Made by a program: the position numbers and the translations under genes. Positions 4,332-62,840 of a stretch of 64,000 bases of DNA are shown in pieces. The stretch is from positions 394,730-458,729 of IMG/VR virus record IMGVR_UViG_3300028920_000022; one strand, 5' to 3'. The notes below the pieces were generated by a model. It had not been told where the DNA came from. It ran no database searches and saw only the letters and a list, made by a program, of their open reading frames with translations. Numbering within the stretch: the stretch's first letter is position 1; every line of letters starts with the position of its first letter.

Positions 4332-4574
4332 ATGAGAAATCACAGTTTCATTCGGGTGGAAACACCACAAAGTTACTCCGCTCACAAAACAGCACAGTAT
4401 TATAGATGTCAAAGATGTAATTTATTAATGTATGACACTGGCATTTCTCGTTACGTTTCTTGTCTGCATGATACTGGCATTATGCCAACGCCGCTTATGT
4501 CGCCAGACACAATAGACTGTGAAATGCAAGAAATAATATGGAAAGAAGAAATTATTAAGGACATAATAGAATGA
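4332..4574 (+). CDS. Small Cys protein, IKDIIE C-terminal tag family
   Basis: YYRCQRC motif; ends IIKDIIE; paralog of the next ORF. Confidence 0.65.
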   Translation: MRNHSFIRVETPQSYSAHKTAQYYRCQRCNLLMYDTGISRYVSCLHDTGIMPTPLMSPDTIDCEMQEIIWKEEIIKDIIE

Positions 4575-4819
4575 AACTTGGCACCCACGATTTTGTTGAA
4601 ATATGCGAACCTATAAATAGTCCAATTTTTAACGCAGAATGTCAATATTATCGATGTATACGATGTAATCTTTTGATTTATAAAAGTAAGCTTTATCATC
4701 CGGGAGAGTGTGTTACATCATTGGTAGAGAGTAGTAGAACAGTCTCACCAGATAGTATCAACTGTGCCGAACAAGAGAAAAAGTTTCGGTTACAATCGAT
4801 TAAGGACATAATAGAATGA
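4571..4819 (+). CDS. Small Cys protein, IKDIIE family
   Basis: YYRCIRC motif; ends SIKDIIE; ATGA coupling. Confidence 0.65.
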   Translation: MKLGTHDFVEICEPINSPIFNAECQYYRCIRCNLLIYKSKLYHPGECVTSLVESSRTVSPDSINCAEQEKKFRLQSIKDIIE

Positions 4820-5013
4820 ATCGAATGCACACCTGTGCTGAATGTGGAAATCTGTTATTAATTAGCAAAGGCCCAGACAGAACAAGAACAAACCGAGGAA
4901 AAACCATAATTTTACCTAACGATTTTGAATACGAATATTGCCCCAACTGCAAGGCTGAATGGATGACAGCAACACAAATTAACGATCTAAGCGATTTGTT
5001 TGATGGTAAATAA
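4816..5013 (+). CDS. YgiT/MqsA-type zinc-finger protein (orphan)
   Basis: CAEC...IILPNDFEYEYCPNCKAEWMT pattern; no HTH. Confidence 0.55.
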   Translation: MNRMHTCAECGNLLLISKGPDRTRTNRGKTIILPNDFEYEYCPNCKAEWMTATQINDLSDLFDGK

Positions 5014-5470
5014 TAATACAACCCGCGAGTTCGGAACCATTGTTGGGACTTTGTTTGGTAAGGAACCAGAACGTGGGTTTCTGGTGTGTTCAATAGATAT
5101 TGAATTCGACAGCGGAGGAAGACAAACATTTTGTTTTGGCGTGCCAGATCTGAAATTTATTCCTATTCTGCGTAGAGAAATATGTGGTATGTTTGGGGTT
5201 ACGAAAGAGAAAGCGCTGCTAAATCAAAAATGTTATGCTTTGAGATGTTTCCCTGGTAGAACTGAAATAATAGAAGGTATCGCCACAGAATCTGGCGCAA
5301 AGTTTACACGTGTAGGTTGGGCTAAGAGAATGGGGCTGGAACAGGAAACAGTAATACAAGAAAAGTATACTGAGTACCAAAAATTAAAACAGTACCATCG
5401 TAAATGCCTAGATGAAATTGAAGACAAGATGACCAAAATAATGTTTGAATACGTAGATTGGGAAAAATAA
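5000..5470 (+). CDS. Hypothetical protein
   Basis: ORF in operon. Confidence 0.6.
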   Translation: MMVNNNTTREFGTIVGTLFGKEPERGFLVCSIDIEFDSGGRQTFCFGVPDLKFIPILRREICGMFGVTKEKALLNQKCYALRCFPGRTEIIEGIATESGAKFTRVGWAKRMGLEQETVIQEKYTEYQKLKQYHRKCLDEIEDKMTKIMFEYVDWEK

Positions 5471-6132
5471 TGGGCGGAGAACTGTTTTTAGGAATCAAAC
5501 GCGCAGACGGCAGAGAACAATGTTCTTTGCGTTGGACGAATATTATTCCTTATTTTTTTGCACATCCCGAAATGTATGAGGAAGGAGCTATGTTTGAGGA
5601 GTTGTGGGATAGACCTAGCCCCAATAATAGTTGGCCACAATCTGTTTTAGTTACAAAAATAGTGCCGTCTGAATATGGTGCAATTTTCTATGATGGTGTC
5701 AACAAAAAGATTTTATCACTACAAGATTATTGCTCGATTGGATTATATTCGGTATCATTGCTGACGGAAGATAGTTACGATTTGTTTGGTGTTCTACTAA
5801 AAGAAGGTAGAATTAATGGCTCAAAAGTTTTGGGAAACCATAGTTTCGAAGATGTTGACAAGAATACCACCATTTCTGAGGTTCAACGGTGGATTAAGGA
5901 ACGTCTTGATTATCCTGTTCAGTATTGCCAATTGGAAATTGACACCAGACCGTTTGATGTGGTACATAGGGGAGTATCTGCAGCACACAAATGGGGATAT
6001 GTTCTAAACTGGCTGAAAGAAAATAATTGGAAAAGTTCGGCTTTGTCTCTAGACGAAGTGTGGGATCAGAAAGATATGCTTGAACATTATGACGACAAAC
6101 AGTCATATACAAAACAATCTATGGAGTTGTAA
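5470..6132 (+). CDS. Hypothetical protein
   Basis: TAATG coupling with the previous ORF. Confidence 0.6.
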   Translation: MGGELFLGIKRADGREQCSLRWTNIIPYFFAHPEMYEEGAMFEELWDRPSPNNSWPQSVLVTKIVPSEYGAIFYDGVNKKILSLQDYCSIGLYSVSLLTEDSYDLFGVLLKEGRINGSKVLGNHSFEDVDKNTTISEVQRWIKERLDYPVQYCQLEIDTRPFDVVHRGVSAAHKWGYVLNWLKENNWKSSALSLDEVWDQKDMLEHYDDKQSYTKQSMEL

Positions 6133-6134
6133 AA

Positions 6135-7277
6135 ATGATTAAATCTATGTTTGATGATGATCTTTACAAGTTCACAATGCAACAGATTATTTTGCATTTC
6201 TATGGAGACAAGAAAGCCGAATATAGATTTAAAAATCGTGGGAACACCAAGTTTAATGACAAGTTTGCTGATAGACTTCAGGATGAGATAGAGAACCTTT
6301 CTCTGTTGGTTCCCGACAAATATGAACTAGAAGAGTTTGCGAAGATTCCGTTTATTAGAGGAGATTATGTAGAGTACTTATCAAGGTATCGTTATGATCC
6401 ACGGCAGGTACAGTTTTCTTTGCGAGATGGAGATTTAGATCTTCGTATAAAGGGTCCATGGCATTCCGCTATATTGTGGGAAGTCAAACTGATGGCGCTA
6501 ATTAGTGAGATTTATTTTGCCCAACATAAAGCTACCTGGACAATGGATGGTCAAAAAGAAAAGCTTGATCGAAAAGCTCTTCTTTTAGAGGCGGTAGATG
6601 CTAAGTATGCCGATTTTGGTACTCGTCGCAGGCGTAGTTTTGAGGTTCAAGATTTGGTGGTAAGAAACCTTGTCAACAAACATGGGTTCCTGGGTACATC
6701 AAATGTACATTTAGCCATTAAACATGGTGTTTCCGCCGTGGGCACTATGGCTCACGAATGGGTTCAGGGTGTATCGGTAGCTGAGGATTTATTGCATGCT
6801 AATGGTATTATGATGGACAGATGGAATTCTTTTTATCAGGGACAGTTGGGTGTTGCTTTAACTGATACATTTACCACTCCGCACTTTTTATACAACAGTT
6901 TTGATGCCAAGCGCGCTGCTGCATTTTCTGGAGTTAGACAAGATTCGGGCGATCCGTTTTGGTTTGCGAATCAGGTGATAAATCGATACCTACAACTAGG
7001 AATTAACCCCAAAACCAAAACCATTATTTTTAGCGATAGTTTAGATGCCAAAACTGCCGCCAAACTACAGATCCATTGTGATGGAAAGATTAACTGTGCT
7101 TTTGGCATTGGCACCAATCTAACTAATGATTTTGACAATTTGAAACCAATTAATATGGTGATCAAGTTGTGGTCAATTGACGGAATTCCGGTAGTAAAGT
7201 TGTCAGATAATGCTGGCAAAAACAATGGCGATCTATGGATGCTTGGGGTTGCGAAGAGGGTGTTTGGGGTATCATGA
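6135..7277 (+). CDS. pncB: Nicotinate phosphoribosyltransferase
   Basis: DDDLYKFTMQQ, ADFGTRRR, GTSNV, GTMAHEW, ALTDTF, GVRQDSGDP, IIFSDSL, FGIGTNLT, VKLSD..GK motifs. Confidence 0.95.
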   Translation: MIKSMFDDDLYKFTMQQIILHFYGDKKAEYRFKNRGNTKFNDKFADRLQDEIENLSLLVPDKYELEEFAKIPFIRGDYVEYLSRYRYDPRQVQFSLRDGDLDLRIKGPWHSAILWEVKLMALISEIYFAQHKATWTMDGQKEKLDRKALLLEAVDAKYADFGTRRRRSFEVQDLVVRNLVNKHGFLGTSNVHLAIKHGVSAVGTMAHEWVQGVSVAEDLLHANGIMMDRWNSFYQGQLGVALTDTFTTPHFLYNSFDAKRAAAFSGVRQDSGDPFWFANQVINRYLQLGINPKTKTIIFSDSLDAKTAAKLQIHCDGKINCAFGIGTNLTNDFDNLKPINMVIKLWSIDGIPVVKLSDNAGKNNGDLWMLGVAKRVFGVS

Positions 7278-8304: not shown

Positions 8305-9321
8305 ATGTCAAAGCGAAATCTGGTTAAGTCTCGTGTTCGTGGAGCTATTTTGGGAACCGCAATTGGAGACGCCCTAGGTGCTCCATTTGAAATGATGGAA
8401 AAAGAACAAATACATAACCTATTGCCGGTTCCGTGGACATGGGGACAACAGCAGAAGGGTATAGTGTTTTCCGAAAACTTTGCTCATCCAAATCTAGGAA
8501 TCGGTCAATGGACCGATGATACTCAATTAATGCGCACTATTTTGTGGTCGATTATTGACGATCATGCCATTGATCCATATGGTATTGCTAAATATACCAG
8601 TGAGGTTTTTGAGAAAGAACAGCTTCGAGGATGGAGCAAATCCGTAATTTCTGCAGCAAAACGACTTTCTCGTGGGGTTCCGTGGTACGATTCTGCCAAC
8701 GAATCCATCGGTATTGGCAACGGTATCGCCATGAAAGCTGCTCCTTTGGGTATTTACCTGGCTAAATACCTGAAAAACGATTACAACTATTCTACCCATG
8801 AGTTTGGCGCCAACCTTAGACATGCCATTGTGTCTATTGTTGGTGTAGGACAAATTACCCACCATGAGCTGGGAATCATGGGTGGCGTAATGCAAAGTGT
8901 CTTAGTTGGTCTTTCGTTCAATAATGTCAAGAACAAGAAGTTGATTCTTAAGGTTCTGGGCAATATTGAAAAGGAATTTTCTGGTGCCACACGGTTTACA
9001 GATAAGCTAAGAATTGCGCTAAAATACAATAGTATTGCGGATGTGGCTGATAATATTGGAACAGACAGCAAGGCAGACAAATCCTGGGTAACTGCAGCTG
9101 CTGTTTTTCTCAACACCAAGAGGCGCAGTGATGCTGCAAAACGCATGATGGAGCTAATCTGCCAGGGCGGCGATTGTGATACTACCGGAGCAATGTTCGG
9201 AGCCTTAGCTGGAGCCCGTTGGGGAATTTCTGCTTTTCCCACGAATCTCAGGAAAGAAGTCGAGGCAAGCAAGGAACTGTTAAAGTTAGCAGATGGTTTG
9301 TATGGAGTGGTTTCTACTTGA
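8305..9321 (+). CDS. ADP-ribosylglycohydrolase (DraG/ARH family)
   Basis: GAILGTAIGDALG, GQWTDDT, GNGIAM, GGDCDTTGAMFGALAGA motifs. Confidence 0.93.
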   Translation: MSKRNLVKSRVRGAILGTAIGDALGAPFEMMEKEQIHNLLPVPWTWGQQQKGIVFSENFAHPNLGIGQWTDDTQLMRTILWSIIDDHAIDPYGIAKYTSEVFEKEQLRGWSKSVISAAKRLSRGVPWYDSANESIGIGNGIAMKAAPLGIYLAKYLKNDYNYSTHEFGANLRHAIVSIVGVGQITHHELGIMGGVMQSVLVGLSFNNVKNKKLILKVLGNIEKEFSGATRFTDKLRIALKYNSIADVADNIGTDSKADKSWVTAAAVFLNTKRRSDAAKRMMELICQGGDCDTTGAMFGALAGARWGISAFPTNLRKEVEASKELLKLADGLYGVVST

Positions 9322-19363: not shown

Positions 19364-19695
19364 TGCGCTTTCCTCATCACTATGGACTTAAATTCTGGCG
19401 GACCACCAATCACAACAACATCTTCAGCATTATACTGGCATGGAACTTTTTCAAACCATAAGTTATCAAAAACTGTATCTGTACTTGGGCTTCCTATAAT
19501 ATATGAGTTGAATACACGTATCGTTATTGGGTTAATTTGTGAGTAAGGAAACGCAAAGTTAGCCTTAAAGACATGTTTAAGTCTGCATATATCAAAACGA
19601 ATAATATCGCTAAAGAACAGATTATTGTCTCTCCACAGATTTCTGGCGGTACCGACAATCACCCCTTCACATTCAATTAGAATGTTTGTTGACAT
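19360..19695 (-). CDS. Hypothetical protein, possible shortened tail-tube-like paralog
   Basis: STNILI..EG..VG, IRFD, SQINPITI, TVFDNLWF pattern recalled from myovirus tube proteins. Confidence 0.45.
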   Translation of the reverse strand: MSTNILIECEGVIVGTARNLWRDNNLFFSDIIRFDICRLKHVFKANFAFPYSQINPITIRVFNSYIIGSPSTDTVFDNLWFEKVPCQYNAEDVVVIGGPPEFKSIVMRKAQ

Positions 19696-19961
19696 TATTG
19701 TATTATGTTTTTTATAACGTATTCGTCACAAGAATACAAATCACCAACACAAGAATATAAATCACCAACATATATAATGTTATTTTCTGTTTTTAAACTG
19801 CACGCGAAAAACCCACACTTTTTACATTGATATTGTATAGCAACCTCAAACACATTATTATCTATAACCTCAAAATCATGTGTGCTTAATTTTTCATTAT
19901 TTATGGGATAATGATTCCACCGTCTTTTTATGATTTCGGAAATATTAATTTTGTGCATCAC
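19695..19961 (-). CDS. Small Cys protein, IKDIIE family
   Basis: YQCKKC; duplicated GDLYSC; ends VIKNIIQ. Confidence 0.6.
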   Translation of the reverse strand: MMHKINISEIIKRRWNHYPINNEKLSTHDFEVIDNNVFEVAIQYQCKKCGFFACSLKTENNIIYVGDLYSCVGDLYSCDEYVIKNIIQ

Positions 19962-20819: not shown

Positions 20820-21275
20820 CTACACAATTATATCCTCAATAACCACATCATCGTCGGTGTACGAACAAGGAATTGTCCACCACTCTAGTGCTTCATTTAG
20901 AACTGCATTTCCGCTGGGATGATAACAAGAACCACCAGCAATACTTTTCAAATATGGAACTACTATTTGCTCACCTTGGATGGCGCTAGCATGCAAATGT
21001 TTACCGGGGTTAGTTGAAGCCAATATTCTACATTTTTTGCATATACAACTATATTCTCCAAAATTCCATATTGTTGTTGCACTAACCGACCTGCCTTTTA
21101 CAATAATCTGTGCCAAATCGTGTTTTTCGTCAAACTCACCGTAACGCAAACTTGTTACACATCCTTTTGAATCACGTGCATACCAACGAACCCCACACTT
21201 CACACAGAAATCATAAGTCATTCCGTTATAACTAAATTGATGCGGTTTCATTATTTTAGGAATTCGTAATCCCAA
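20820..21275 (-). CDS. Cys-rich protein, IKDIIE-like end
   Basis: CVKC, CKKC; ends VIEDIIV. Confidence 0.55.
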   Translation of the reverse strand: MGLRIPKIMKPHQFSYNGMTYDFCVKCGVRWYARDSKGCVTSLRYGEFDEKHDLAQIIVKGRSVSATTIWNFGEYSCICKKCRILASTNPGKHLHASAIQGEQIVVPYLKSIAGGSCYHPSGNAVLNEALEWWTIPCSYTDDDVVIEDIIV

Positions 21276-27270: not shown

Positions 27271-27525
27271 TTATGTAATTATGTTCTGAATTATAAAATC
27301 ATTACAATTTATTTGTTCAGGATTCAATGCCGTAGCAATACTTATCTGAGAAATATAAAAATTTATTTCATTTTGAAATATTCCTTTAAATATTATTAAT
27401 CCGCAATTCTGGCATTGCCAATATTTTGGACGAATATCGTTAATCAAATTAATACCATCATTAAGTTTTGCAACCTCTTCTGCTGTTAACTCCTTCAGTT
27501 CGTGTGTACCTATTTTGAGACTCAT
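27271..27525 (-). CDS. Small Cys protein, IKDIIE family
   Basis: YWQCQNC; PEQINC; ends IIQNIIT. Confidence 0.6.
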   Translation of the reverse strand: MSLKIGTHELKELTAEEVAKLNDGINLINDIRPKYWQCQNCGLIIFKGIFQNEINFYISQISIATALNPEQINCNDFIIQNIIT

Positions 27526-27929
27526 TCTATTATATCTTTGATTATTTTTTCATTTTCGGTTAAAAATTCTTCTCTATACACGTTATCTGCTACCCACGAT
27601 ACTCTTAAAGAATTGCTATGAGAATATCCAGTTAAGATAGCGTTACAAACATGGGTAATATATTTTTTATGATTTTCTTTCCAACCGAACATAAAATGAA
27701 ATTTATTATCCACACTGGTTCCACGAAAACGTTCTTTTACAAAATGTTCGATATCAAAGTTTTCGTCAAATAAAATCAAACCTTCTAATTCACCATGAAC
27801 ATCTTCATATCTTCCGCAATATTCGACGGTCATGGTGAGGCTATAAGCCCAACCGATAATTTCTTCGTTGTACAGTACTTGAACACTATTCGATAATGTA
27901 GCGAATGTCGATATTAGTTCTACAGGCAT
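27522..27929 (-). CDS. Hypothetical protein (possible tail-tube-like), IKDIIE family
   Basis: Ends KIIKDIIE; ATGA coupling. Confidence 0.6.
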   Translation of the reverse strand: MPVELISTFATLSNSVQVLYNEEIIGWAYSLTMTVEYCGRYEDVHGELEGLILFDENFDIEHFVKERFRGTSVDNKFHFMFGWKENHKKYITHVCNAILTGYSHSNSLRVSWVADNVYREEFLTENEKIIKDIIE

Positions 27930-28272
27930 CGCACAGAGTACGATGCCAGCTTAATTCGTCTCGAAGTTTTCCTGGTTTACCACAATCTTCGCAAACGTGG
28001 TCGCTTTTATTTTCGGCTTCCATAACCAAATCTTGAACTATTTTAATTTCTTGTTCCGTTACATTTGGGTAACTTAAATATCTATAACCAAATCTCAAAC
28101 CTCCCAACTTTTCTTTAATGTAGGTAGCTTCAATTTTAATATCTGTTTTTTGAATTTCTATACATAATTCACGCAGGAGTTCGTACCAACCATCTCCGCA
28201 CCCTATGTAGACGTGGGATACAAAGATTTTGGGGAATTCTTGACGCAATTTGTCGGTTAATTCTGGGCTCAT
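27886..28272 (-). CDS. Conserved phage protein, IKDIIE-like end
   Basis: GDGWYELL, IKEKLGGLRF, CEDCGKPG, TLC..C; ends DIRYIIE. Confidence 0.7.
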   Translation of the reverse strand: MSPELTDKLRQEFPKIFVSHVYIGCGDGWYELLRELCIEIQKTDIKIEATYIKEKLGGLRFGYRYLSYPNVTEQEIKIVQDLVMEAENKSDHVCEDCGKPGKLRDELSWHRTLCDACRTNIDIRYIIE

Positions 28273-28703
28273 TCTATTATATCCTTAATGATACGTTCGT
28301 TTTCGTTTTTTTCTACGTCTTGTGGAAGGAACTTGTAAATTATAAACATGCATGGTTCGGTCAAAATATTCTTTGCATTACACTTTTCTAAAATGTCAAA
28401 AATAATAATTATAATAATAGGCAGTAAAACTATTGGATATGCCCACAAAAGTAAAAACAGAATTATCGGCGGGTATTCTTTGAAAAAACCATTAATACCA
28501 GCCTGGACATCTGTTTTGTATATTTTGTCGCCTGCGTGTAATTCTATTTTGTATATCATTTCTGTAAGTATAAATGCCAAACAAAAAGGGAATCCCATAA
28601 GATACATAGTCAGCAATCCCCACGGCATAGGGGACAATTTAGCAACTCCCATGCCGGCGAGGAAGAAAATGATGCTACCTATTAGAAAGTTTCTTATTTT
28701 CAT
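28269..28703 (-). CDS. Membrane protein, IKDIIE family
   Basis: Three TM segments; ends RIIKDIIE. Confidence 0.65.
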   Translation of the reverse strand: MKIRNFLIGSIIFFLAGMGVAKLSPMPWGLLTMYLMGFPFCLAFILTEMIYKIELHAGDKIYKTDVQAGINGFFKEYPPIILFLLLWAYPIVLLPIIIIIIFDILEKCNAKNILTEPCMFIIYKFLPQDVEKNENERIIKDIIE

Positions 28704-43696: not shown

Positions 43697-43755
43697 AAAT
43701 ACGTACACAACCAATAATAATTGGTGGGTTTAGGTTTCTCGACAAAACCGTACTA

Positions 43756-44342: not shown

Positions 44343-44366
44343 ATTTAATTAGAATCGGTAACGAGG

Positions 44367-47378: not shown

Positions 47379-47647
47379 TCTCGCTCCGAGAATGAAAGGG
47401 CTTTTTCTGGTATTCCCGCTTGTATGAATTTTTCCCGAAGATCCATGTTGTCCATAGAGGTATAGAATTCGAATTCATCTTTATTTTCAGAAAGTTCCCA
47501 GCCACGATCATAATCCTCCTTCAATATTGCTGAAAAGATTTTATCATAACCACGAACAATGGTTTTTTGAATGTCAGTAAGCCACTTCTTTTTTACAACA
47601 AAAGAAGAGCTAGAAGAGTTTGATACGAATCCGGTTCTAATTTTCAC
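47375..47647 (-). CDS. FVSNSSSSSF-leader family protein (copy 5)
   Basis: GTG start; KIRTGFVSNSSSSSFVV. Confidence 0.7.
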   Translation of the reverse strand: MKIRTGFVSNSSSSSFVVKKKWLTDIQKTIVRGYDKIFSAILKEDYDRGWELSENKDEFEFYTSMDNMDLREKFIQAGIPEKALSFSERE

Positions 47648-47877
47648 GTTATCACCTCTTTGATAGCACATTCACTACAAGACATTATTTCATTAACTTT
47701 TTTGATTTCTATGTTATTATACACTCCATAATTTGTTTTGTAGGTTATCGTTTGAGATGCATGGGTCGGCTCATTTTTGTCCAACAAATTAAACGCCTCT
47801 GTGCCACAGCATTCGCATATCCATTTGTAGACATGGGCATATAAACGTTCTTTTCTAATCCACACGTGGTCTTGCAT
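47644..47877 (-). CDS. Small Cys protein, IKDIIE-like end
   Basis: WICECC; ends SCSECAIKEVIT. Confidence 0.6.
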   Translation of the reverse strand: MQDHVWIRKERLYAHVYKWICECCGTEAFNLLDKNEPTHASQTITYKTNYGVYNNIEIKKVNEIMSCSECAIKEVIT

Positions 47878-56148: not shown

Positions 56149-56160
56149 CTCAGAATAATG

Positions 56161-56574
56161 CTATTTTATTACGTCCTCGATGATGAAGTTATTTTTCCAC
56201 CCATTGAACCACTTTTCGGCTTTTCTCATGCATAAAATCATGTCAAGTTCGACATTGGAAATGGCTTGGAGTCGGTTGAACCAGTCTAAAAACAATTCAC
56301 GAAAATCTTCGTTTATCTCTTCTGATTTTGTAACAGTGTAAGTTAATTTTCCAGGAATAATTTCATCACTTTTGCAAAACAAAGCAACCTCTAATTTATG
56401 TGCGTAGTGTTCAGGATTAGGATCATCGTAGTATCTTGTCCCTGATACCACTTCTGGAATTAATCTGTACAGGTGCATGTTTAAAACATAACCCGGGCAA
56501 TATATGGAAAACTCTGACCGATCAGCTTTTTGACCGCCTCTGTTTATGTTGATGGTAGTTATATATGGTTTCAC
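56161..56574 (-). CDS. Hypothetical protein, IKDIIE-like end
   Basis: Ends FIIEDVIK. Confidence 0.55.
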   Translation of the reverse strand: MKPYITTININRGGQKADRSEFSIYCPGYVLNMHLYRLIPEVVSGTRYYDDPNPEHYAHKLEVALFCKSDEIIPGKLTYTVTKSEEINEDFRELFLDWFNRLQAISNVELDMILCMRKAEKWFNGWKNNFIIEDVIK

Positions 56575-56833
56575 TTTTCCTCGGAAAATGTTTGTACCAA
56601 GCGATTACAGCTACAATGGAAAAATTCATCACATAATTAACCATCAGCACAAAGTCAGAAGAATAATTAGCTAGAGTATAGCAAATATAGCAGAACTCTC
56701 CAATCAGCCAAAGCCAAATTGTGAGGGTCGCCATCCCATTAGCATGTCCTTCTTTTATGGCTTTCAGCATCTGCGGAAGCCCAGAGAAGGAAAAGCATAC
56801 CATACCGATAAGCCCAACTACCACTAAATTCAT
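56522..56833 (-). CDS. PQ-loop/SemiSWEET-like membrane protein
   Basis: GLIG..CF....LPQM.K..K.G.A.G; three TM helices. Confidence 0.75.
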   Translation of the reverse strand: MNLVVVGLIGMVCFSFSGLPQMLKAIKEGHANGMATLTIWLWLIGEFCYICYTLANYSSDFVLMVNYVMNFSIVAVIAWYKHFPRKSETIYNYHQHKQRRSKS

Positions 56834-56860
56834 AACGATAAATGGACAAAAATTAGTAGG

Positions 56861-56933
56861 CGGGTCCTGCGAGATTTGAACTCGCGTCTAAAAGCTTTAA
56901 AGGCTTTCGCTCTCGCCGCTGAGCTAAGGACCC
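56861..56933 (-). tRNA. Ochre suppressor tRNA (anticodon TTA), Lys-like body
   Basis: GGGTCCT/AGGACCC acceptor, GCTC/GAGC D-stem, AAAGC-CTTTAAA-GCTTT anticodon arm, GCGAG-TTCAAAT-CTCGC T-arm, G73. Confidence 0.92.
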
Positions 56934-57253
56934 AGAGCCAAATTAAGTTTGCTACATAGCTTCTTAGATTTCCTACCGGGCTCTAAAGCAATTGCTGTAA
57001 TCTCATCATCGAAATCTGGTTCTCTAAATATAGAAAACTTGATTTCCTTTTCTTTCGCCAATCCCATCAATTCCTTTAAACTATTCTCGTTTTCTGTTTC
57101 TAATATAACTAAGTAGTTTGAGGAATTGAACCACAACAAATCTTCCTGCGGATGATCGTTTACGAAAGCTCTCAGTGCATGACAGGATTGTGCTGCCCTA
57201 GCTCCTGGGGAAAGGTCTGTTCTAGTGACAATATACAGTTTGTTTTAAGCCAT
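56924..57253 (-). CDS. Peptidyl-tRNA hydrolase II-like protein with in-frame TAA at codon 3
   Basis: GAGGA SD; ATG GCT TAA AAC AAA CTG TAT ATT...; KLYIVTRTDL.PG..AAQSCHA, YLVIL, FREPD, TAIAL motifs. Confidence 0.82.
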
Positions 57254-57254
57254 G

Positions 57255-57788
57255 TCAATCCTCGTCATCGTAGTCTGATTCTTCCGCAATTTCTTTCCGT
57301 TCTTGAGCACACGCCCTGAAATAACTGGATATCCTTTCTACTATAGTTTCTGGAATGTCTTGTTTACGAAACTTTTCTTTCCACCCTTCGTATGGTGTGT
57401 CGCCAGAAATCCAATGTCTTTCTCCAACAGTAAAACAGGGAGGGTCGCTATATATCCGACCTAAATCTGTTTCAATATATGGCCAAATCTCAAGTGGTGA
57501 GTCATTACAGCAGCCGCAGTTGTGTCTAATTTCGCAATCATTGACTCGGTTATTGAGTGAAGCAGAACAAAACCTTTCAGTTTTCCACCTATTTATATGA
57601 CGGCGCAAATCCGGGTATTTTTCGCTTCTTTTTATAAGCAAGTCTAGTTCTTGTTGTTTTTTCTGGACCTCTTTTTCTAATTCGTCTATTATACCCGGAA
57701 TACTGTCTTTCCAATTTTGGTATTCCCGTTGTTCTTCGGGGGTCATTTTAAAGTAGTCTTTGTCGGTATATTTGCTGTAGTCTTTCAT
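57255..57788 (-). CDS. Hypothetical protein
   Basis: RHNCGCC.DSPLE..PY motif; ATGA-coupled to the upstream gene. Confidence 0.7.
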   Translation of the reverse strand: MKDYSKYTDKDYFKMTPEEQREYQNWKDSIPGIIDELEKEVQKKQQELDLLIKRSEKYPDLRRHINRWKTERFCSASLNNRVNDCEIRHNCGCCNDSPLEIWPYIETDLGRIYSDPPCFTVGERHWISGDTPYEGWKEKFRKQDIPETIVERISSYFRACAQERKEIAEESDYDDED

Positions 57789-58108
57789 GCTGCCTCCTGA
57801 GATATTCTGTTAATTCGTACAAAGAGCCAATCACGAACTTCCTTCCACTCAGGTCCTGAAACAGAAAACTCAATATCAGAGGCTCTGCAAATATATTTTG
57901 CAATATCTAGAGCCAATCCGGTATAAAACGTAGTCCTTCCAGTTGAGCAATGTTTGTCTTCGTTCGTGGTTCGTTCCATAACCTCATAAGGCAAACCACG
58001 CAAAAAACCATATGCCAACAATCTACAGCGTTGTTTCCAACCGCCAGCTTTAGCACCTTCAATCACCCAAAGTCTAAGTTGAGCAATAGCATTTTTTCTT
58101 GTATTCAT
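57785..58108 (-). CDS. Hypothetical phage protein (first gene of the pth operon)
   Basis: AGGAG SD; RCRLLAYGFLRG.PYE..E motif. Confidence 0.7.
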   Translation of the reverse strand: MNTRKNAIAQLRLWVIEGAKAGGWKQRCRLLAYGFLRGLPYEVMERTTNEDKHCSTGRTTFYTGLALDIAKYICRASDIEFSVSGPEWKEVRDWLFVRINRISQEAA

Positions 58109-58124
58109 GTCAATCTCCTAAAAA

Positions 58125-58202
58125 TCAAAAAGTTACAAACAGTTTTTCTGGAAACTTTTGTTTAGGAGGTCCACGAATTTGATTAATTTACGAGTCGTGC
58201 AT
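58125..58202 (-). promoter_or_regulatory. Leader uORF MHDS*INQIRGPPKQKFPEKLFVTF* (ochre + RGPP arrest-like motif) with attenuator-like hairpin
   Basis: Translation of 58202-58125; TAA at 58190-58188; CAAAAGTT...AACTTTTTG pairing followed by a T-rich run and the SD. Confidence 0.65.
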
Positions 58203-58242
58203 GTTGTATTTATTCTTGTTTATTAGTTGACAGCTCGACAAA

Positions 58243-58731
58243 TCATCTATGGACCCTATTAATTGCCACATCTGGCTTATCTGGCTTATCTGGCTTATCT
58301 GGCTTATCAGGTTTATCAGGTTTGTCTGGCAAAACAGGTGCAGGTTTATCTACGGAAGCCGTTCCAATAGCTTTAATTTTCTTATCTTTATTATTTTGAA
58401 ATGTTGTCAAACGAGTATCTATTTTTTCTTGAAACAAATTTATAATATCAAGAACATCTTGTTGTCTAGGTCTTTCTGGTAGTGGAATTTGCCGCATTTC
58501 TAGGTAACTATTGTTTAGCTCCTGTTTAATATTATTACAACAGCCAGACTGTATTTGGTTGTATAAAAGCATTAAATCTACTAATGCAGCTTTTGCGTCT
58601 TTATCTAAATTATCTTGTTTTACACCGTATATTCTTCTTCCAATGATTTTGCGCAAACTTTTGTATCCGGCAAGTAGCCTATTTCCGCTTCTTATCGTAT
58701 TTAGAATAATTATTTTATTTTTGGTGTTCAT
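58243..58731 (-). CDS. Hypothetical protein with PDK repeats
   Basis: ATGA-coupled. Confidence 0.6.
   Translation of the reverse strand: MNTKNKIIILNTIRSGNRLLAGYKSLRKIIGRRIYGVKQDNLDKDAKAALVDLMLLYNQIQSGCCNNIKQELNNSYLEMRQIPLPERPRQQDVLDIINLFQEKIDTRLTTFQNNKDKKIKAIGTASVDKPAPVLPDKPDKPDKPDKPDKPDKPDVAINRVHR
58271..58330. repeat. 9-bp tandem repeat (TCTGGCTTA)n encoding PDK
   Basis: About 6.7 units. Confidence 0.9.
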
Positions 58732-58916
58732 TCTATTATGTTTTTGATATCGAAATCCCTATCAGAAATGGTACAAGGTCTTAGCCTTTTGTGCGGAATA
58801 TAGAAATTTCCTTTATAGACAGTAGTTCGTAGTTGTCTTTTTGTTTTTCCACATTTTAAGCAACGTTTTTGATTCCAGCCATTGTCGGTTTTCCATTTGT
58901 GCTTATAGTTCGCCAT
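58728..58916 (-). CDS. Small Cys protein, IKDIIE family
   Basis: CLKC; ends DIKNIIE. Confidence 0.6.
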   Translation of the reverse strand: MANYKHKWKTDNGWNQKRCLKCGKTKRQLRTTVYKGNFYIPHKRLRPCTISDRDFDIKNIIE

Positions 58917-59526
58917 TTTTAGTTGCCTGCATGTAGTGGTTTGCAACCCAAGGAAGATATTTCCTCCACTCTTGGCTCTGTTCATAACGCTTTTTATCAA
59001 AAATAGGATTACGCAACTTATCCAACACGATAAGTTTTGTTGGGTCTAAAACACAAACTTCGTCACGATCACCTGAAGTAATAAACCCCTTTAATGCAGA
59101 ATACCCTTGGGATCGCAAAATTATATTTGTAGCCAAATGTTTGTTTTGAATTTCGCTTTTATCAATTTTATCGATTAATGGTCGTTTTTCGAAAAAACCC
59201 CAGCCTCTAACATCTAAAGCTTTTCCAATAAAATCAAAAATAAACATGTTTTGGTATAAACTTACCGATTGCATATTGCTTTCAAATGAACCTATGTCAT
59301 TATTTCTTAATCTTTCTATGACCCTGTCACTAATTTCATAACCGTAGATACCAACGGGATTAAGTCCAGGATATCTTGGACGTGTATTTATGCCCAATTT
59401 ATCGGCAGAAGTGAAGTGTAAATATTTTCCAACATACTTTTCCAGTGTATAAAATACATCTTCCAGCTCCACACCCTCACGTTCATATCGGGTTTTTCCC
59501 ATTTTCTCCATACCTTTATGTGTCAA
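58903..59526 (-). CDS. Stand-alone paralog of the giant protein's N-terminal ART-like domain
   Basis: YLHFT..KLGIN...PVGIYGY...GYSAL...DEVCVLD. Confidence 0.6.
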   Translation of the reverse strand: MTHKGMEKMGKTRYEREGVELEDVFYTLEKYVGKYLHFTSADKLGINTRPRYPGLNPVGIYGYEISDRVIERLRNNDIGSFESNMQSVSLYQNMFIFDFIGKALDVRGWGFFEKRPLIDKIDKSEIQNKHLATNIILRSQGYSALKGFITSGDRDEVCVLDPTKLIVLDKLRNPIFDKKRYEQSQEWRKYLPWVANHYMQATKNGEL

Positions 59527-59756
59527 TATTGGATGGAAGGTTGTGTATCTATATCGTCCAGATTTTCTCTTATAAAATATAGATATCGCTCAAATTTCTT
59601 GGGGTTTTCTAGAAGTATTGTATATTCGGCGGGAGAAATTCCTAAGTATTCGTGTAGTGTCAAATTAGATTTGGACAAATTCCAATCTGTGATTTCGTCG
59701 TGGATATCCTCAAACTCAACCTCCCCTCTTAGGTAGCGTGTAAGAAAGTTTTCCAA
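59523..59756 (-). CDS. Small phage protein
   Basis: DIHDEI..W......LHEYLGIS..EY. Confidence 0.65.
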   Translation of the reverse strand: MENFLTRYLRGEVEFEDIHDEITDWNLSKSNLTLHEYLGISPAEYTILLENPKKFERYLYFIRENLDDIDTQPSIQY

Positions 59757-59766
59757 ACAGTCCTTT

Positions 59767-60279
59767 TTAGAGTATCGTTTTAATTTCCGGCAAATTGCGG
59801 CAGGTTTGTTTATAATCTAAACCATAACCAATCACAAATTTATCTTCAATCGTAAAACCAAGATAATCTATTTTTACTTCTTTCACTGTTTTTGCCGGTT
59901 TATGCAGTAATGAACATAACTTTACGGACTTTGGTTTTCTAGCTGATAGCATATCCAAAAGATATCTGGATGTCAAGCCTGTATCTACTACATCTTCCAC
60001 AATTAACACATGTTCATTTTCTATGGAGAAATTTAGATCGTGTGTAATTTGTACGAGACCACTAGATTTATTATCATCACCATAGCTTTGAACACCCATA
60101 AATCCTATTTTCATCGGTGTTTTTATTTGTCGTGATAAATCAGCCGTAAATATAAAACTACCCTTCAAAATACAAATCAATACTATTGATTTCCCGTCGT
60201 AATCCTTGGTAATCTGTTTGCCTAACTGTTTGATTTTATTACGTATTTTACGTTCTGAAATTAAAGTTTTCATGCGCAA
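59767..60279 (-). CDS. hpt: Hypoxanthine phosphoribosyltransferase
   Basis: ICILKGS.IF.ADL, VLIVEDVVDTGLT, LLHKP, FVIGYGLDY...RNLP. Confidence 0.95.
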   Translation of the reverse strand: MRMKTLISERKIRNKIKQLGKQITKDYDGKSIVLICILKGSFIFTADLSRQIKTPMKIGFMGVQSYGDDNKSSGLVQITHDLNFSIENEHVLIVEDVVDTGLTSRYLLDMLSARKPKSVKLCSLLHKPAKTVKEVKIDYLGFTIEDKFVIGYGLDYKQTCRNLPEIKTIL

Positions 60280-60360
60280 ATTGTAATCCTTCGTGGTCTG
60301 TTCGTTTGTAGCTCATTCAGATAGGCGTATTTGAAAAACATTTCGAAGATATTTTTTGAG

Positions 60361-60489
60361 TCAAGCACAGATTATGGTCCTTCGTGGGTGGTAATATCTA
60401 ATTGTTTGCCAATCATATTGACTCATCCAAATTTTGGAAGATATTAGGGACCAACTATTGATTTCTTTAAATACTTCTTTCTTGTCCAT
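60361..60489 (-). CDS. Mini-protein, ICA family
   Basis: Ends HPRRTIICA*; start uncertain (track start overlaps the MTase). Confidence 0.5.
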   Translation of the reverse strand: MDKKEVFKEINSWSLISSKIWMSQYDWQTIRYYHPRRTIICA

Positions 60490-60532
60490 AACGAATCTTT
60501 TGTGTGAACTTAATGTGACGGTTTTATTTTTG

Positions 60533-61630
60533 TTAGCATAAAACCTTTTTAAAATAGTAAAAGAAACGAGGAAAATCAGATCCGGGTTGTTGTAATGACT
60601 TTTTAATTTTAATGATTTCCAGTTTACCTGCGGTTTTTTCTTCAATCCAGCGTTTGTTAGGATAAGCTAATTTTCTATTACCACTTCCTTTTTGGGGATG
60701 ATCGTTGTTATTATACGTTTCTATCTCAATAATAACAATACCATCAATTTTAACAAGATTACTAACTAATGTAAAAAACTTTTCTTGACTATCTCCAAAA
60801 TAGTGAAACGTGGATGCGCAAAAAACAACATCAAAATTTTCGGAGCTATCAAAATTTAAAGCGTTGCAACATATAAATTTAACATTTTGTTTTCTAAATA
60901 CTCGATTATTTAATCTATTAGCAATACACAAAACATCTGGATTCACATCTATACCTACAATACTGCCCGAAGTCTGCTTGGCAATTTCAAAACAAAAAAA
61001 GCCATTATTACAGCCCACGTCTAAAAATGACTGTCCATCAGTTATTTCTATTTCTGCCAACTGTAATTTCGTTGGTGACATTGAATCACCGCGGTGATTA
61101 AAATCTGTAAATGATTGGTAGTTAATGCCCTTTTTTAATTTAGAAAAATCTATTCGTTTTAAGTCATCATGAGATTTAATACAAGCTTCTGGTATTGTTT
61201 TTTCGTCGTCAGTATGAAAATTAATTAGATTACGTTTATAAACAAGGGTATGTTGTTTTTGGAACTGTAATCTGCATATTTCATTGCACCCTAGTTCTTT
61301 AAGAATTTCAATCAATTCTTTTTCTATAGAAGATATAACGTATCCCTCTATCAAAACATCTACTATGCCTTCGGCTTTCTCGATTCCCTTTTGCAAGATT
61401 TTTTTCGTCACATGCAGATATCTAGTTTTATTCCATCTAAGGCTAGAACAGTGTAGCTGAATGTTTCTAACGAAACCCACCACTTTTTCATATTGAGGAT
61501 CTCTAAAAAAAGTATCCAAACAATATCGTTGTACGTTAGGGTTGTGTTCTTTGTAATAATGAGTCCAAGTTGTTTTCCCAGAATTGGGCATTCCTGCACA
61601 TAAAAACACCCGTAAATATTGAGCTGTCAC
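60533..61630 (-). CDS. P-loop kinase-like domain fused to class I SAM methyltransferase
   Basis: AGMPNSGKTT; FLDVGCNNGFF, GIDVN, FDVVFC.STFHY. Confidence 0.8.
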   Translation of the reverse strand: MTAQYLRVFLCAGMPNSGKTTWTHYYKEHNPNVQRYCLDTFFRDPQYEKVVGFVRNIQLHCSSLRWNKTRYLHVTKKILQKGIEKAEGIVDVLIEGYVISSIEKELIEILKELGCNEICRLQFQKQHTLVYKRNLINFHTDDEKTIPEACIKSHDDLKRIDFSKLKKGINYQSFTDFNHRGDSMSPTKLQLAEIEITDGQSFLDVGCNNGFFCFEIAKQTSGSIVGIDVNPDVLCIANRLNNRVFRKQNVKFICCNALNFDSSENFDVVFCASTFHYFGDSQEKFFTLVSNLVKIDGIVIIEIETYNNNDHPQKGSGNRKLAYPNKRWIEEKTAGKLEIIKIKKSLQQPGSDFPRFFYYFKKVLC

Positions 61631-61761
61631 TGGTATGCCCTATCGCCATATTTCCTAAACAATCTAATCGATAACATTAGTGCTAATGCCTCTGTTTGTT
61701 TACTGGGCTCTAATACTCTTAAAATAATTTAGAATGCAGCAGACGAGAGTAAATTCGTTTT

Positions 61762-61920
61762 TTAGGCACAGATTGTTGTGGTCCTTCTCTTGCCCCAATG
61801 TACATTAGAAAAAGCGGAACCCAGCATTAACATGGCTTTTTGCATCTTAATCAAGTTCTGTATATGGACATTGAGAATCTTTTCTGTGAATTTGTGGTGA
61901 CAAGTTGTTTTTGTTAGCAT
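61762..61920 (-). CDS. Mini-protein, ICA family
   Basis: Ends GKRRTTTICA*; start uncertain. Confidence 0.5.
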   Translation of the reverse strand: MLTKTTCHHKFTEKILNVHIQNLIKMQKAMLMLGSAFSNVHWGKRRTTTICA

Positions 61921-61936
61921 AATGTACAATTTGTGT

Positions 61937-62188
61937 ATGAGAATTTTTGTTACATTTCCTGAGGAAGATTTTGGTAGTGCTACGCTAGAAATACATGCAT
62001 CAACATCTTCTAATGTATTAGAACGATTACCTATAGCTTTGCGGAATATTGGTGTCAAATCTTTCTACGATTATATTTTTCAAAACGGAGATAAACTAAT
62101 TATTCAAGCTAAAATCGTAGACTATGACAAAAATAAACTTTCCTCTACAAAAGCTATAAACATACTAAAATCATTAAGCACAGATTAG
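61937..62188 (+). CDS. Hypothetical protein (opposite strand)
   Basis: Protein-like composition; no clear SD. Confidence 0.4.
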   Translation: MRIFVTFPEEDFGSATLEIHASTSSNVLERLPIALRNIGVKSFYDYIFQNGDKLIIQAKIVDYDKNKLSSTKAINILKSLSTD

Positions 62189-62296
62189 AACTCTATTTGG
62201 AGCGATTTCTATTAGCCCATAATCAACAAGACAATCTAAGAGATTACTAAGAACATCTGTGCAATTCTTTTGGACTATTACATTTCTTACGCACAT
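62174..62296 (-). CDS. Mini-protein (40 aa), ICA family (not in track)
   Basis: MCVRNVIVQKNCTDVLSNLLDCLVDYGLIEIAPNRVLICA*. Confidence 0.55.
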   Translation of the reverse strand: MCVRNVIVQKNCTDVLSNLLDCLVDYGLIEIAPNRVLICA

Positions 62297-62373
62297 ATTA
62301 AAACCCTTTTGGCGGGAACAATGCTAATTTCTATTATTTGAAAATCGTTGGGTATATAATTCCATCCATTCAT
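62287..62373 (-). CDS. Mini-protein (28 aa), ICA family (not in track)
   Basis: MNGWNYIPNDFQIIEISIVPAKRVLICA*; ATGA-coupled to the upstream gene with AAGGA SD. Confidence 0.6.
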   Translation of the reverse strand: MNGWNYIPNDFQIIEISIVPAKRVLICA

Positions 62374-62840
62374 TCTATTATATCCTTAATTAACAATTCA
62401 TTATATTTCTGAACGTTTATAAGAAAAACTTTCCAACTATTTCTTGCCCAAATAAATTTACCGCTTAATCTACCACCTTTTTCTAAACCTTCCCTAAAGG
62501 AACTAAAAACAAATTCATCAAATCTAAAATCAAATACAAAACCATCATCGGTTAGTATCTTAAATACAATCCGATCTCTACGATCCTCTAGATCAATAAC
62601 TGTTAGTCCCGAAAATTCGTTGTTTTTAATAATCTTTTTGCCGACTTTATGTTCGGTTTTAGTACCCCAACCGGTTCGCCATGTTTTTGCCCAATTTATT
62701 GCCGTATCATATGACTTCTTGCCTTTTTGAGCAATATCTAAAGGAAAAGCCGGAGTTCCTTCATAAGAATATCCGTAAAGATCTCCCGTTTGTTTCACGC
62801 CTTTAGGAAAAATATAGATAACTTCTTTTGGAATAATCAC
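62370..62840 (-). CDS. Hypothetical protein, IKDIIE family
   Basis: Ends LLIKDIIE. Confidence 0.65.
   Translation of the reverse strand: MIIPKEVIYIFPKGVKQTGDLYGYSYEGTPAFPLDIAQKGKKSYDTAINWAKTWRTGWGTKTEHKVGKKIIKNNEFSGLTVIDLEDRRDRIVFKILTDDGFVFDFRFDEFVFSSFREGLEKGGRLSGKFIWARNSWKVFLINVQKYNELLIKDIIE

What the first reader, a model, noticed from the sequence alone, without database searches (positions are those of the whole stretch)
4332..62840. Twelve ORFs end in an IKDIIE-like tag that often doubles as an SD/stop/start coupling cassette
C-termini: 4574 IIKDIIE, 4819 SIKDIIE, 19695 VIKNIIQ, 20820 VIEDIIV, 27271 IIQNIIT, 27522 IIKDIIE, 27886 DIRYIIE, 28269 IIKDIIE, 47644 AIKEVIT, 56161 IIEDVIK, 58728 DIKNIIE, 62370 LIKDIIE. 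The bodies are unrelated (Zn ribbons, membrane, tube-like). Six end in ATAATAGAATGA, and four of these have AAGGA nine nt before the next ATG. Variants without the SD keep the peptide. Either a shared docking/degradation tag or a recombination-friendly cassette junction for shuffling accessory genes.
Basis: partly seen in the sequence, partly recalled or inferred. Interest (0 to 1): 0.7.

Follow-up and report, generated by a model that had tools for sequence, protein, structure and literature searches.

The report
Shared C-terminal peptide tag in jumbo phage
More than a hundred small, otherwise unrelated proteins of this 459-kb uncultured sediment phage (12 in the window) end in the same short helix, …I-K-D-I-I-E, kept by selection on the protein and not the DNA, which suggests a common docking or sorting handle not reported in any paper or deposited phage genome I could search.

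Summary
All 12 window ORFs end in the tail. A scoring matrix built from 507 tails picks exactly these 12 (scores 4.5-35; next ORF -11). The window is the end of a 458,729-bp phage record in which at least 110 ORFs (about 14% of genes, roughly 130 with variant tails) end in (L)(S/T)x(D/E)E-φ-φ-I-(K/R)-(D/E)-I-I-x-COOH. A second jumbo phage (435 kb, median 44% protein identity) has about 110, and 84 independent metagenome contigs carry it. Cellular genomes and deposited phages do not. Selection acts on the peptide: over 250 homologous pairs the last 7 codons have pS 0.71 but pN 0.083. The core motif sits exactly one residue from the C-terminus in 175 of 194 occurrences. The tail is a C-terminal helix on at least three different body types plus membrane proteins. 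ATGA stop/start overlap is enriched (57% vs 19%), but 43% of members are uncoupled and keep the peptide, so coupling is an overlay. Best reading: a modular C-terminal docking or targeting handle for one shared, unidentified partner (confidence about 0.5). No receptor was found.

The parts
4332..4574 (+). Tagged ORF, 80 aa, H...CxxC...C zinc mini-domain (core family); tail EEIIKDIIE; ATGA overlap with the next gene; AAGGA 9 nt before its ATG
4571..4819 (+). Tagged ORF, 82 aa, core zinc family; tail QSIKDIIE; ATGA overlap with 4816-5013. AlphaFold2 model: four strands plus C-terminal helix 65-81, which is the tail
19695..19961 (-). Tagged ORF, 88 aa, zinc-family relative (BLAST cluster shared with the second phage); tail YVIKNIIQ; TAATG overlap with 19360-19695
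20820..21275 (-). Tagged ORF, 151 aa, Cys-rich singleton body; tail VVIEDIIV; stop TAG, 37-nt gap, not coupled
27271..27525 (-). Tagged ORF, 84 aa, core zinc family; tail FIIQNIIT; stop TAA, 11-nt gap, not overlapped
27522..27929 (-). Tagged ORF, 135 aa, orphan body without the Cys pattern and with no Pfam hit; tail KIIKDIIE (best matrix score, 35.2); ATGA overlap
27886..28272 (-). Tagged ORF, 128 aa, C-terminal CxxC...CxxC ribbon; weakest tail IDIRYIIE (score 4.5); stop TAG
28269..28703 (-). Tagged ORF, 144 aa, polytopic membrane protein (three hydrophobic segments); tail RIIKDIIE; ATGA overlap; AAGGA
47644..47877 (-). Tagged ORF, 77 aa, CxxC plus SCSEC; tail CAIKEVIT; the stop lies in GTGA (an in-frame GTG of the next ORF)
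56161..56574 (-). Tagged ORF, 137 aa, orphan body; tail FIIEDVIK; stop TAG, 12-nt gap; homologue on related contig L249
58728..59000 (-). Tagged ORF, 90 aa, CxxC zinc body; tail FDIKNIIE; ATGA overlap with 58243-58731
62370..62840 (-). Tagged ORF, 156 aa, orphan body; tail LLIKDIIE; AAGGA plus ATGA, which starts only a 28-aa mini-ORF ending in RVLICA. Orthologues at 78-79% identity keep the tail

Best explanation
The IKDIIE-like ending is a protein-level, strictly C-terminal, roughly 12-residue amphipathic alpha-helix. It has an N-capping box (S/T-x-x-E), charged residues spaced i/i+4 (E-9, K/R-5, E-1) and an isoleucine stripe. It is attached as a module to a very large, lineage-specific set of small accessory proteins in a clade of uncultured sediment jumbo phages. 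SHOWN: the tail is selected as a peptide. Its register to the free C-terminus is fixed, with exactly one variable residue after I-I. It sits on at least three different body types (an H/CxxC/C zinc mini-domain, a cysteine-free alpha/beta domain, DUF4116 alpha-solenoid repeats) and on membrane proteins. It is confined to the small-gene arms of the genome. The stop/start coupling signal is laid over it by codon choice. INFERRED: the helix is a common handle by which many different bodies dock to, or are sorted by, one shared partner from the phage or the host. The variable bodies would supply specificity and the tail the constant link. Candidate partners are a proteolytic or unfoldase machine (both phages encode a true ClpP) or a virion- or compartment-loading site. 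None was identified.
For: At least 110 tagged ORFs in G000, plus about 22 paralogues with variant tails. About 110 in the second 435-kb phage G001. 322 tagged ORFs on 98 independent metagenome loci. Residue frequencies over 507 unique tails: I94 / K77+R18 / D69+E17+N14 / I93 / I96 / E80. Register: exactly one residue after the core in 77/88 (G000) and 98/106 (G001) occurrences, never 2-5. Codons: all three Ile codons are used at every conserved Ile, and Arg uses both CGN and AGR. pN/pS is 0.12 in the last 7 codons against 0.64 in codons -25 to -14, with pS about 0.7 in both. The solvent-side positions K/R(-5) and D/E(-4) are as conserved as the hydrophobic ones. Modularity: with tails removed, the 507 proteins fall into 281 BLAST clusters. 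Two AlphaFold2 models with different secondary-structure layouts both end in the tail helix (pLDDT 82 and 91). The larger tagged proteins in G001 are DUF4116 repeat proteins (E 1e-20 to 1e-28). Four of 110 have hydrophobic transmembrane-like segments. Bacterial multi-repeat proteins match only profile positions about 4-64 of the zinc body, not the tail. Absent from cells: 12 single hits in 596 Gb of genomes, none at an ORF end. No tagged ORF lies between 175 and 375 kb, where the terminase and the largest conserved genes lie. ClpP is present in both phages.
Against: No partner was found. The one complex prediction gave no answer. No PDZ, TPR, proteasome/HslV, Lon, ClpX-type or beta-clamp family was detected in the phage. 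In the zinc family the motif's Cys is probably the fourth metal ligand (nearly invariant). AlphaFold2 models the helix confidently alongside both domains, and essentially no tail-less paralogues exist. All of this would also fit a purely structural role. No expression, proteomic or interaction data exist for these uncultured phages, and no RNA run holds the sequence.
Confidence: 0.5

Rival explanations
1. Purely structural module. The tail is a C-terminal capping or core helix that small domains need in order to fold, and in the zinc family it carries the fourth metal ligand. It is shared because most tagged genes descend from, or recombined with, one ancestral 3' end. It has no external partner.
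For: Cys at -11 is nearly invariant together with H and CxxC in the core family. The helix is modelled with pLDDT 83-91 and 82. There are no tail-less paralogues. Phage G's zinc-ribbon expansion also has a conserved C-terminal helix.
Against: The same helix occurs on three different body types and on membrane proteins. Exposed-face residues are conserved as strongly as buried ones, and the register to the terminus is fixed. The tail is far more conserved than any other part of the bodies (pN/pS 0.12 vs 0.64). The related bacterial repeats lack it.
Confidence: 0.25
2. Degradation-linked variant of the handle. The tail is a C-terminal degron for timed removal of accessory proteins, or an adaptor tether that delivers bound targets, acting through phage ClpP together with a host unfoldase.
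For: A true ClpP (204 bits, full length) is conserved in both phages. The motif is strictly terminal with a variable last residue. It occurs on soluble and membrane proteins alike. By established knowledge, terminal peptides serve as tags and tethers in Clp systems (ssrA tag; the SspB C-terminal ClpX-binding peptide).
Against: No Clp-type unfoldase is encoded in the phage. The tail ends mostly in a charged residue, unlike the non-polar ssrA-type ends (my knowledge). The YjoB/VCP-like AAA protein sits in an operon with a topoisomerase. The complex prediction gave no answer.
Confidence: 0.15
3. Nucleotide-level element. The conserved sequence is really a Shine-Dalgarno/stop/start coupling cassette, a -10-like promoter box, or a recombination junction for shuffling genes, and the peptide is a by-product.
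For: ATGA overlap is enriched (63/110 vs 129/691). TGA stops are 75% against 44%. AAG, xGG and ATA codons are over-used in the tail. The 12-mer occurs 21 times in the genome. One 2.1-kb indel relative to contig L249 has its boundary exactly at the stop of tagged ORF 62370.
Against: pS in the tail is 0.71, i.e. saturated. 47/110 members are uncoupled and keep the peptide, and SD-like RGGA is not associated with coupling (p 0.44). Among uncoupled members TGA is not clearly enriched (19/47 vs 173/562). Sigma-70-like sites are not enriched (52 vs 45.2 +/- 6.8). Most pairs of window tails share 12 identical nt or fewer.
Confidence: 0.04
4. Recognition (follower) sequence for a modifying enzyme, for example one of the phage's radical SAM/SPASM proteins, which would act on the nearby Cys or acidic residues as in RiPP systems.
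For: Radical SAM and SPASM genes are present. Cys at -11 occurs in 44% of tails, with D/E at -10 and -9. Many small tandem genes share one conserved end.
Against: The bodies are folded domains of up to 297 aa, including solenoids and membrane proteins. Half of the tails lack Cys. The radical SAM gene has no true orthologue in G001, which has just as many tags. Tagged genes are not adjacent to these enzymes.
Confidence: 0.05

Closest known systems
Lineage-specific expansion of about 35 zinc ribbons in Bacillus phage G (Iyer et al. 2021, PMC7824862)
   Same: A jumbo phage with tens of small tandem zinc-ribbon paralogues whose most conserved part is a C-terminal helix (…YWKENDRYLAKILSK in gp32, 34, 35 and 46). 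Function unknown; the authors proposed transcription factors or DNA-binding proteins.
   Different: No detectable sequence similarity (tblastn found nothing useful). The phage G helix has a different sequence and is not held in a fixed register to the terminus. I did not see it on unrelated bodies in the 40 kb I read. Here the tail spans several body types, more than 100 genes per genome and many phages.
Capsid or shell targeting peptides: the T4 internal-protein capsid targeting sequence and encapsulin cargo-loading peptides (from my own knowledge, not tested here)
   Same: A short terminal peptide shared by otherwise unrelated cargo proteins, which docks them to one assembly. The encapsulin peptide is C-terminal and the shell has the phage HK97 fold. 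The T4 peptide ends in I-x-E, like the tail.
   Different: The T4 signal is N-terminal, is cleaved off, and occurs on a handful of proteins. Encapsulin peptides have a different (Gly/Ser/Leu-rich) consensus. Neither is known on about 15% of a proteome or on membrane proteins.
Constant C-terminal handles on variable binder proteins: poxvirus ankyrin-repeat proteins with a C-terminal F-box-like (PRANC) domain; the C-terminal ClpX-binding peptide of SspB; C-terminal MIM helices bound by the MIT domain of Vps4 (my knowledge)
   Same: The architecture is a variable binding body (repeats or small domains) plus one invariant C-terminal element that plugs into a shared machine. DUF4116 solenoids and zinc mini-domains carrying the tail fit this layout.
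   Different: There is no sequence relationship. The partner here is unknown, and none of the partner families was detected in the phage.
Pfam PF23674 RYYR-CCHC / DUF7128-type zinc repeats of bacterial surface proteins
   Same: The zinc body (H…YYxCxxCG…C) matches these repeats. Long multi-repeat proteins are the top profile hits, and Pfam names these families on them.
   Different: Window proteins score below the Pfam cut-off (18.8 vs 27 bits). The bacterial repeats match only the body and lack the IKDIIE helix.

Membership tests
Translational-coupling / SD cassette (nucleotide element) | Conservation resides in the nucleotides, including synonymous sites | tested here: not met
   pS 0.71 in the last 7 codons against pN 0.083. 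All Ile codons and both Arg codon families are used.
Translational-coupling / SD cassette (nucleotide element) | Motif present only, or mainly, where a downstream gene is coupled | tested here: not met
   47/110 members are uncoupled and keep the tail. RGGA occurs in 36/63 coupled vs 23/47 uncoupled members (p 0.44). ATGA overlap itself is enriched, OR 5.8.
Pfam RYYR-CCHC (PF23674) zinc domain | Score above the gathering threshold | tested here: not met
   18.8 and 12.7 bits against a cut-off of 27 for window 4332-4574 and 4571-4819.
Zinc-binding mini-domain (H + CxxC + C) | Four invariant metal ligands across paralogues | tested here: met
   H6, C29 and C32 are invariant and C65 is at least 90% conserved in 36 sequences. 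Metal binding itself was not tested.
T4-type capsid targeting sequence | N-terminal position, removed by a gp21-type prohead protease | tested here: not met
   The tail is at the C-terminus. PF03420 was not found, but the control search also found it in no genome, so the absence of the protease is inconclusive.
ssrA/ClpX-type C-terminal degron | C-terminal position plus a cognate Clp protease and unfoldase | tested here: inconclusive
   The position is terminal and ClpP is present. No AAA_2 (ClpX/A/C) gene is in the phage.
C-terminal peptide ligands of PDZ or TPR domains | A PDZ or TPR receptor encoded alongside | tested here: not met
   No PDZ_2 or TPR_12 match at E<=1 in the phage. A host receptor cannot be tested.
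Sliding-clamp binding (PIP-like [DE]xxIxxII) motif | A clamp present, and the peptide docks in its pocket | tested here: inconclusive
   No DnaN N-domain match. gp45/PCNA-type clamps were not searched and docking was not tested.
Phage G zinc-ribbon expansion | Detectable homology | tested here: not met
   tblastn of two core members against 50,697 phage records: no match, or only chance hits at E>=2.
RiPP precursor with follower peptide | Short precursor next to its maturase | tested here: not met
   Bodies are folded domains of 58-297 aa, not adjacent to the radical SAM genes. The radical SAM gene is not shared with G001.

The most novel reading that the evidence does not exclude
These jumbo phages run a proteome-scale protein-sorting code. 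One receptor reads a free 'I-x-x-I-I-x-COOH' helix on more than 100 different small effectors per genome (about 15% of all genes). It uses the tag to load them into one destination, such as the virion for co-injection, a compartment, or a ClpP-based machine that destroys whatever the variable bodies have bound. I know of no such C-terminal sorting signal for a large effector repertoire in a bacterial virus.
Probability: 0.3. Interest if true: 0.9.

Novelty: new variant of a known kind. Interest (0 to 1): 0.8.

Why it matters
About one gene in seven of two very large phage genomes, and hundreds of genes on other metagenome contigs, carry the same 7-13-residue ending. That is the largest single shared feature of their 'dark matter' accessory genes. 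If the tail is a handle, one pull-down with a 13-residue peptide could identify the hub that organises over 100 orphan proteins at once. It would also give a way to recognise effectors of this clade by sequence alone. In addition, it would provide a compact, self-capping helical tag and a set of diversified mini-binders (zinc domains, solenoids) of possible use in protein engineering. It is also a clear example of a coding motif and a translational coupling signal layered on the same nucleotides.

Tried and rejected
1. Complex prediction of the last 30 residues of window ORF 27522-27929 with the phage FtsK-like ATPase and the YjoB/VCP-like AAA protein gave 'no answer' (score 0.00). This is not evidence either way.
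2. Fold searches of both models found nothing significant: Foldseek PDB, the ESM Atlas shape search and VIA-align wide for the zinc-domain model (m2b8…), Foldseek PDB and AFDB clusters for the alpha/beta model (m0b7…). The best Z was 3.5, to C1 domains. The Atlas feature search gave only 'hypothetical protein, Viruses'.
3. Pfam and PHROGs on 30 tagged proteins found no significant family except DUF4116.
4. Searches of the phage for proteasome/HslV, Lon, ClpX-type AAA_2, PDZ, TPR and the DnaN N-domain found nothing. The T4 gp21 protease search was uninformative because its control also found nothing.
5. The 1727-aa HEAT-repeat protein as receptor: rejected as a shared receptor because G001 has no orthologue.
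6. A promoter (-10 box) reading of (T/C)ATAAT in the tail: sigma-70-like sites are not enriched.
7. TGA preference as protection from the phage's ochre suppressor tRNA: among uncoupled members TGA is 19/47 against 173/562 in other genes, so the excess comes from ATGA overlaps.
8. Literature search for IKDIIE, IREIIE, IKEIIE, IKNIIE and RYYR-CCHC found nothing relevant.
9. megablast and tblastn against deposited phages found no relatives of the region or of the family. The terminase is only about 25% identical to Bacillus and Geobacillus phage terminases.
10. A search for natural two-domain fusions, to see whether internal tails decay, found too few cases (P0085; L174 ORF 2205-2663) to conclude anything.
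11. An alignment-based locus search in viral contigs failed because the alignment has no conserved stretch long enough.
Full report
WHAT IS THERE. The only correction is that the tail at 19695 belongs to ORF 19695-19961 on the minus strand. ATAATAGAATGA occurs six times in the window, always at a tagged stop, against 0.88 expected. Four of these six have AAGGA nine bases before the overlapping ATG. A position matrix built later from 507 tails scores exactly these twelve ORFs at 4.5-35 and every other window ORF at -11 or lower. The list is therefore both correct and complete.

THE PHENOMENON IS GENOME-WIDE. At least 110 ORFs of 39-203 aa in the phage end in the motif. About 22 further paralogues have slightly different tails such as IIRGIIE or IIMGIIK. 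That is 14-16% of roughly 800 genes. The conserved block is 13 residues long: (L/I)(S/T)(C/x)(D/N/E)(E/D)-φ-(I/M)-I-(K/R)-(D/E/N)-I-I-(E/K/T)-COOH. The loose motif is expected about 1.4 times at C-termini by chance. The strict core occurs 88 times in the proteome, 77 of them exactly one residue from the end and none 2-5 residues from it. Tagged genes lie only in the small-gene arms of the genome (median 102 aa). None lies between 175 and 375 kb, where the terminase and the largest conserved genes are (median 221 aa).

PEPTIDE OR NUCLEOTIDES. Every conserved Ile position uses all three Ile codons, and Arg at -5 uses both CGN and AGR. I compared 250 homologous pairs with a median body identity of 41%. 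In the last seven codons the synonymous difference is 0.71, which is saturated, while the non-synonymous difference is 0.083, a ratio of 0.12. Codons -25 to -14 give a ratio of 0.64 at a similar pS. Orthologues of window ORF 62370-62840 at 78-79% identity change the tail only to LLIKEIIE and ILIREVIE. Selection therefore acts on the peptide.

THE COUPLING LAYER. An ATGA stop/start overlap with a downstream ORF of at least 40 aa occurs in 63/110 tagged genes against 129/691 others (odds ratio 5.8, p 3e-16). This explains the excess of TGA stops, since uncoupled members show no clear TGA excess. Tail codons are biased towards AAG or xGG at -5 and ATA at -3, more so in coupled genes. However, 47/110 members are uncoupled and keep the tail. 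SD-like RGGA is equally frequent in coupled and uncoupled members (p 0.44). The tail does double as a coupling junction, but as an overlay made by codon choice and not as the reason for its conservation. Sigma-70-like promoters are not enriched around it. Most pairs of window tails share runs of 12 identical nucleotides or fewer, which is poor substrate for homologous exchange. In one comparison with a related contig (L249) a 2.1-kb indel begins exactly at the stop of tagged ORF 62370. Gene-boundary mosaicism therefore exists, but this is a single case.

BODIES. With the last 14 residues removed, 52 of the 110 proteins form one BLAST-linked family of 65-100 aa. It has an invariant His, an invariant CxxC and a nearly invariant Cys that lies inside the tail block. 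This looks like a four-ligand zinc site. AlphaFold2 gives four strands followed by the tail as a helix (pLDDT 82), with no significant structural neighbour. A profile of this family finds 808 proteins among 1.8 billion representatives. These are small full-length proteins that include the tail, and long bacterial multi-repeat surface proteins that match only the body, positions about 4-64. The tail is therefore not part of the ancestral repeat. Other tagged proteins have quite different bodies. One is a cysteine-free alpha/beta domain that again ends in the tail helix (pLDDT 91; residues 81-90 at 82) and has no structural neighbour. Others are DUF4116 alpha-solenoid repeat proteins of 198-297 aa. 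There are also CxxC…CxxC ribbons in which the tail starts two residues after the last Cys. Four G000 proteins have hydrophobic membrane segments, including window ORF 28269-28703. In all, 507 unique tagged proteins fall into 281 BLAST clusters once the tail is removed.

DISTRIBUTION. A second complete jumbo phage (435,004 bp, 35% G+C) shares 239 proteins with this one, at a median 44% identity for the larger ones. It has about 110 tagged ORFs with an even more uniform tail, LTxDELMIKDIIE. Ninety-eight of these are independent loci (448 kb) holding 322 tagged ORFs, up to 23 per contig. The same pattern found only 12 single hits in 596 Gb of bacterial and archaeal genomes, none at the end of an ORF. 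Deposited phage genomes contain neither the region nor the family. The source is a marine sediment metagenome, and partial matches occur in wetland and freshwater sediment runs. The terminase is only about 25% identical to any deposited phage terminase.

HOW IT PROBABLY WORKS. The tail reads as a self-sufficient short helix. S/T at -12 and E at -9 form a capping box. E(-9), K/R(-5) and E(-1) are spaced i/i+4. L(-13), I/M(-7), I(-6), I(-3) and I(-2) form one hydrophobic face. This is my reading of the sequence, supported by the helix assignment in both models. Four facts point to recognition by something outside the protein rather than a mere folding element. The polar positions are conserved as strongly as the hydrophobic ones. 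The register to the free carboxylate is fixed while the last residue varies. The same helix is found on unrelated body types and on membrane proteins. The tail is by far the most constrained part of every family. The layout, variable binder bodies plus one constant C-terminal element, resembles known handle systems (from my own knowledge): poxvirus ankyrin/PRANC proteins, the SspB tether to ClpX, MIM helices and Vps4, encapsulin cargo peptides, and the T4 capsid targeting sequence. I therefore commit to a shared docking or targeting handle (confidence 0.5). A purely structural helix is the main rival (0.25), and a Clp-linked degron or adaptor is the most concrete sub-hypothesis (0.15). Both phages encode a true ClpP. 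No Clp unfoldase, Lon, proteasome, PDZ, TPR or DnaN-type clamp was detected in the phage. The single complex prediction gave no answer.

COMPARISON AND NOVELTY. The nearest described case is the roughly 35-copy zinc-ribbon expansion of Bacillus phage G (PMC7824862). I read several of those genes: they also share a conserved C-terminal helix, but with a different sequence and not in a fixed terminal register. They are not detectably homologous to the family here. A text search for the motif found no description. I rate this as a new variant of a known kind, namely a terminal targeting or docking peptide on a lineage-specific effector expansion. It is unusual for its scale (about 15% of genes), its spread over unrelated body types, and its conservation across phages that share only about 44% protein identity.

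Noticed in passing
window minus strand: 24508-24663, 43613-43714, 44184-44342, 44305-44376, 44367-44513, 44978-45247, 60270-60368, 60361-60645, 61762-62058, 62174-62296, 62287-62373; also G000 166811-166900, 206247-206393, 206386-206526: A second C-terminal motif family. Fourteen short ORFs (23-98 aa) end in (R/K)R(V/T)(L/I/T)ICA-stop, where about 0.8 is expected for any given tripeptide end. Arg, Ala, Cys, Ile and Leu codons vary synonymously. One 29-aa member lies 4 nt upstream of a 495-aa radical SAM gene. Others flank a SAM methyltransferase (window 60533-61630) inside a 2.1-kb segment that is absent from related contig L249. These may be RiPP-like precursor peptides, or a degenerate DNA element (ATTTGTGCNTAA). 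G001 has only one such end.
   Followed up: partly
window 56859-56933 (-): ARAGORN calls a tRNA with anticodon TTA (an ochre suppressor). The second phage has a tRNA with anticodon CTA (amber). G000 also carries tRNA-Ile(TAT), which reads ATA, the Ile codon favoured in the tails. Coding density under the standard code is 96%, so I saw no sign of genome-wide recoding.
   Followed up: partly
window 1740-3146 (+), 6135-7277 (+), 8305-9321 (+), 62837-63364 (-): A cluster of NAD/ADP-ribose genes: a eukaryote-like PARP (WGR + regulatory + catalytic domains, E 1e-30), a nicotinate phosphoribosyltransferase, an ADP-ribosylglycohydrolase and a weak macro-domain protein.
   Followed up: no
window 32883-34076 (+): A TnpB/OrfB_IS605-type gene (Cas12f-like TNB domain) is the only plus-strand gene inside a long minus-strand block.
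   Followed up: no
window 35480-40663 (-) and 34434-35483 (-): A 1727-aa HEAT/LRV-repeat protein overlaps (stop/start) a 349-aa protein with a SPASM iron-sulfur domain. The giant protein has no orthologue in the second phage.
   Followed up: partly
G000 160353-161009, 179113-180474, 176930-179116, 164143-165207: The phage encodes a full-length ClpP (204 bits). It also encodes a YjoB/VCP-like classical AAA ATPase that overlaps (stop/start) a type IA topoisomerase, and an FtsK/SpoIIIE-like ATPase. ClpP, the AAA protein and the FtsK-like protein are conserved in the second phage at 47-59% identity.
   Followed up: partly
window 51945-53336 (+), 54667-56148 (-), 17940-20782 (-): Cell-envelope genes: an ice-binding-like adhesin domain protein, a GDSL lipase + SLT transglycosylase fusion, and amidase-like and glucosaminidase proteins. 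These point to a peptidoglycan-bearing bacterial host.
   Followed up: no
L249 (metagenome contig) against window 55594-63313: A related phage contig is syntenic at 65-74% nucleotide identity and keeps homologues of three tagged window ORFs (56161, 58728, 62370). It lacks the 2.1-kb methyltransferase/ICA segment, and the indel boundary lies at the stop of ORF 62370.
   Followed up: partly
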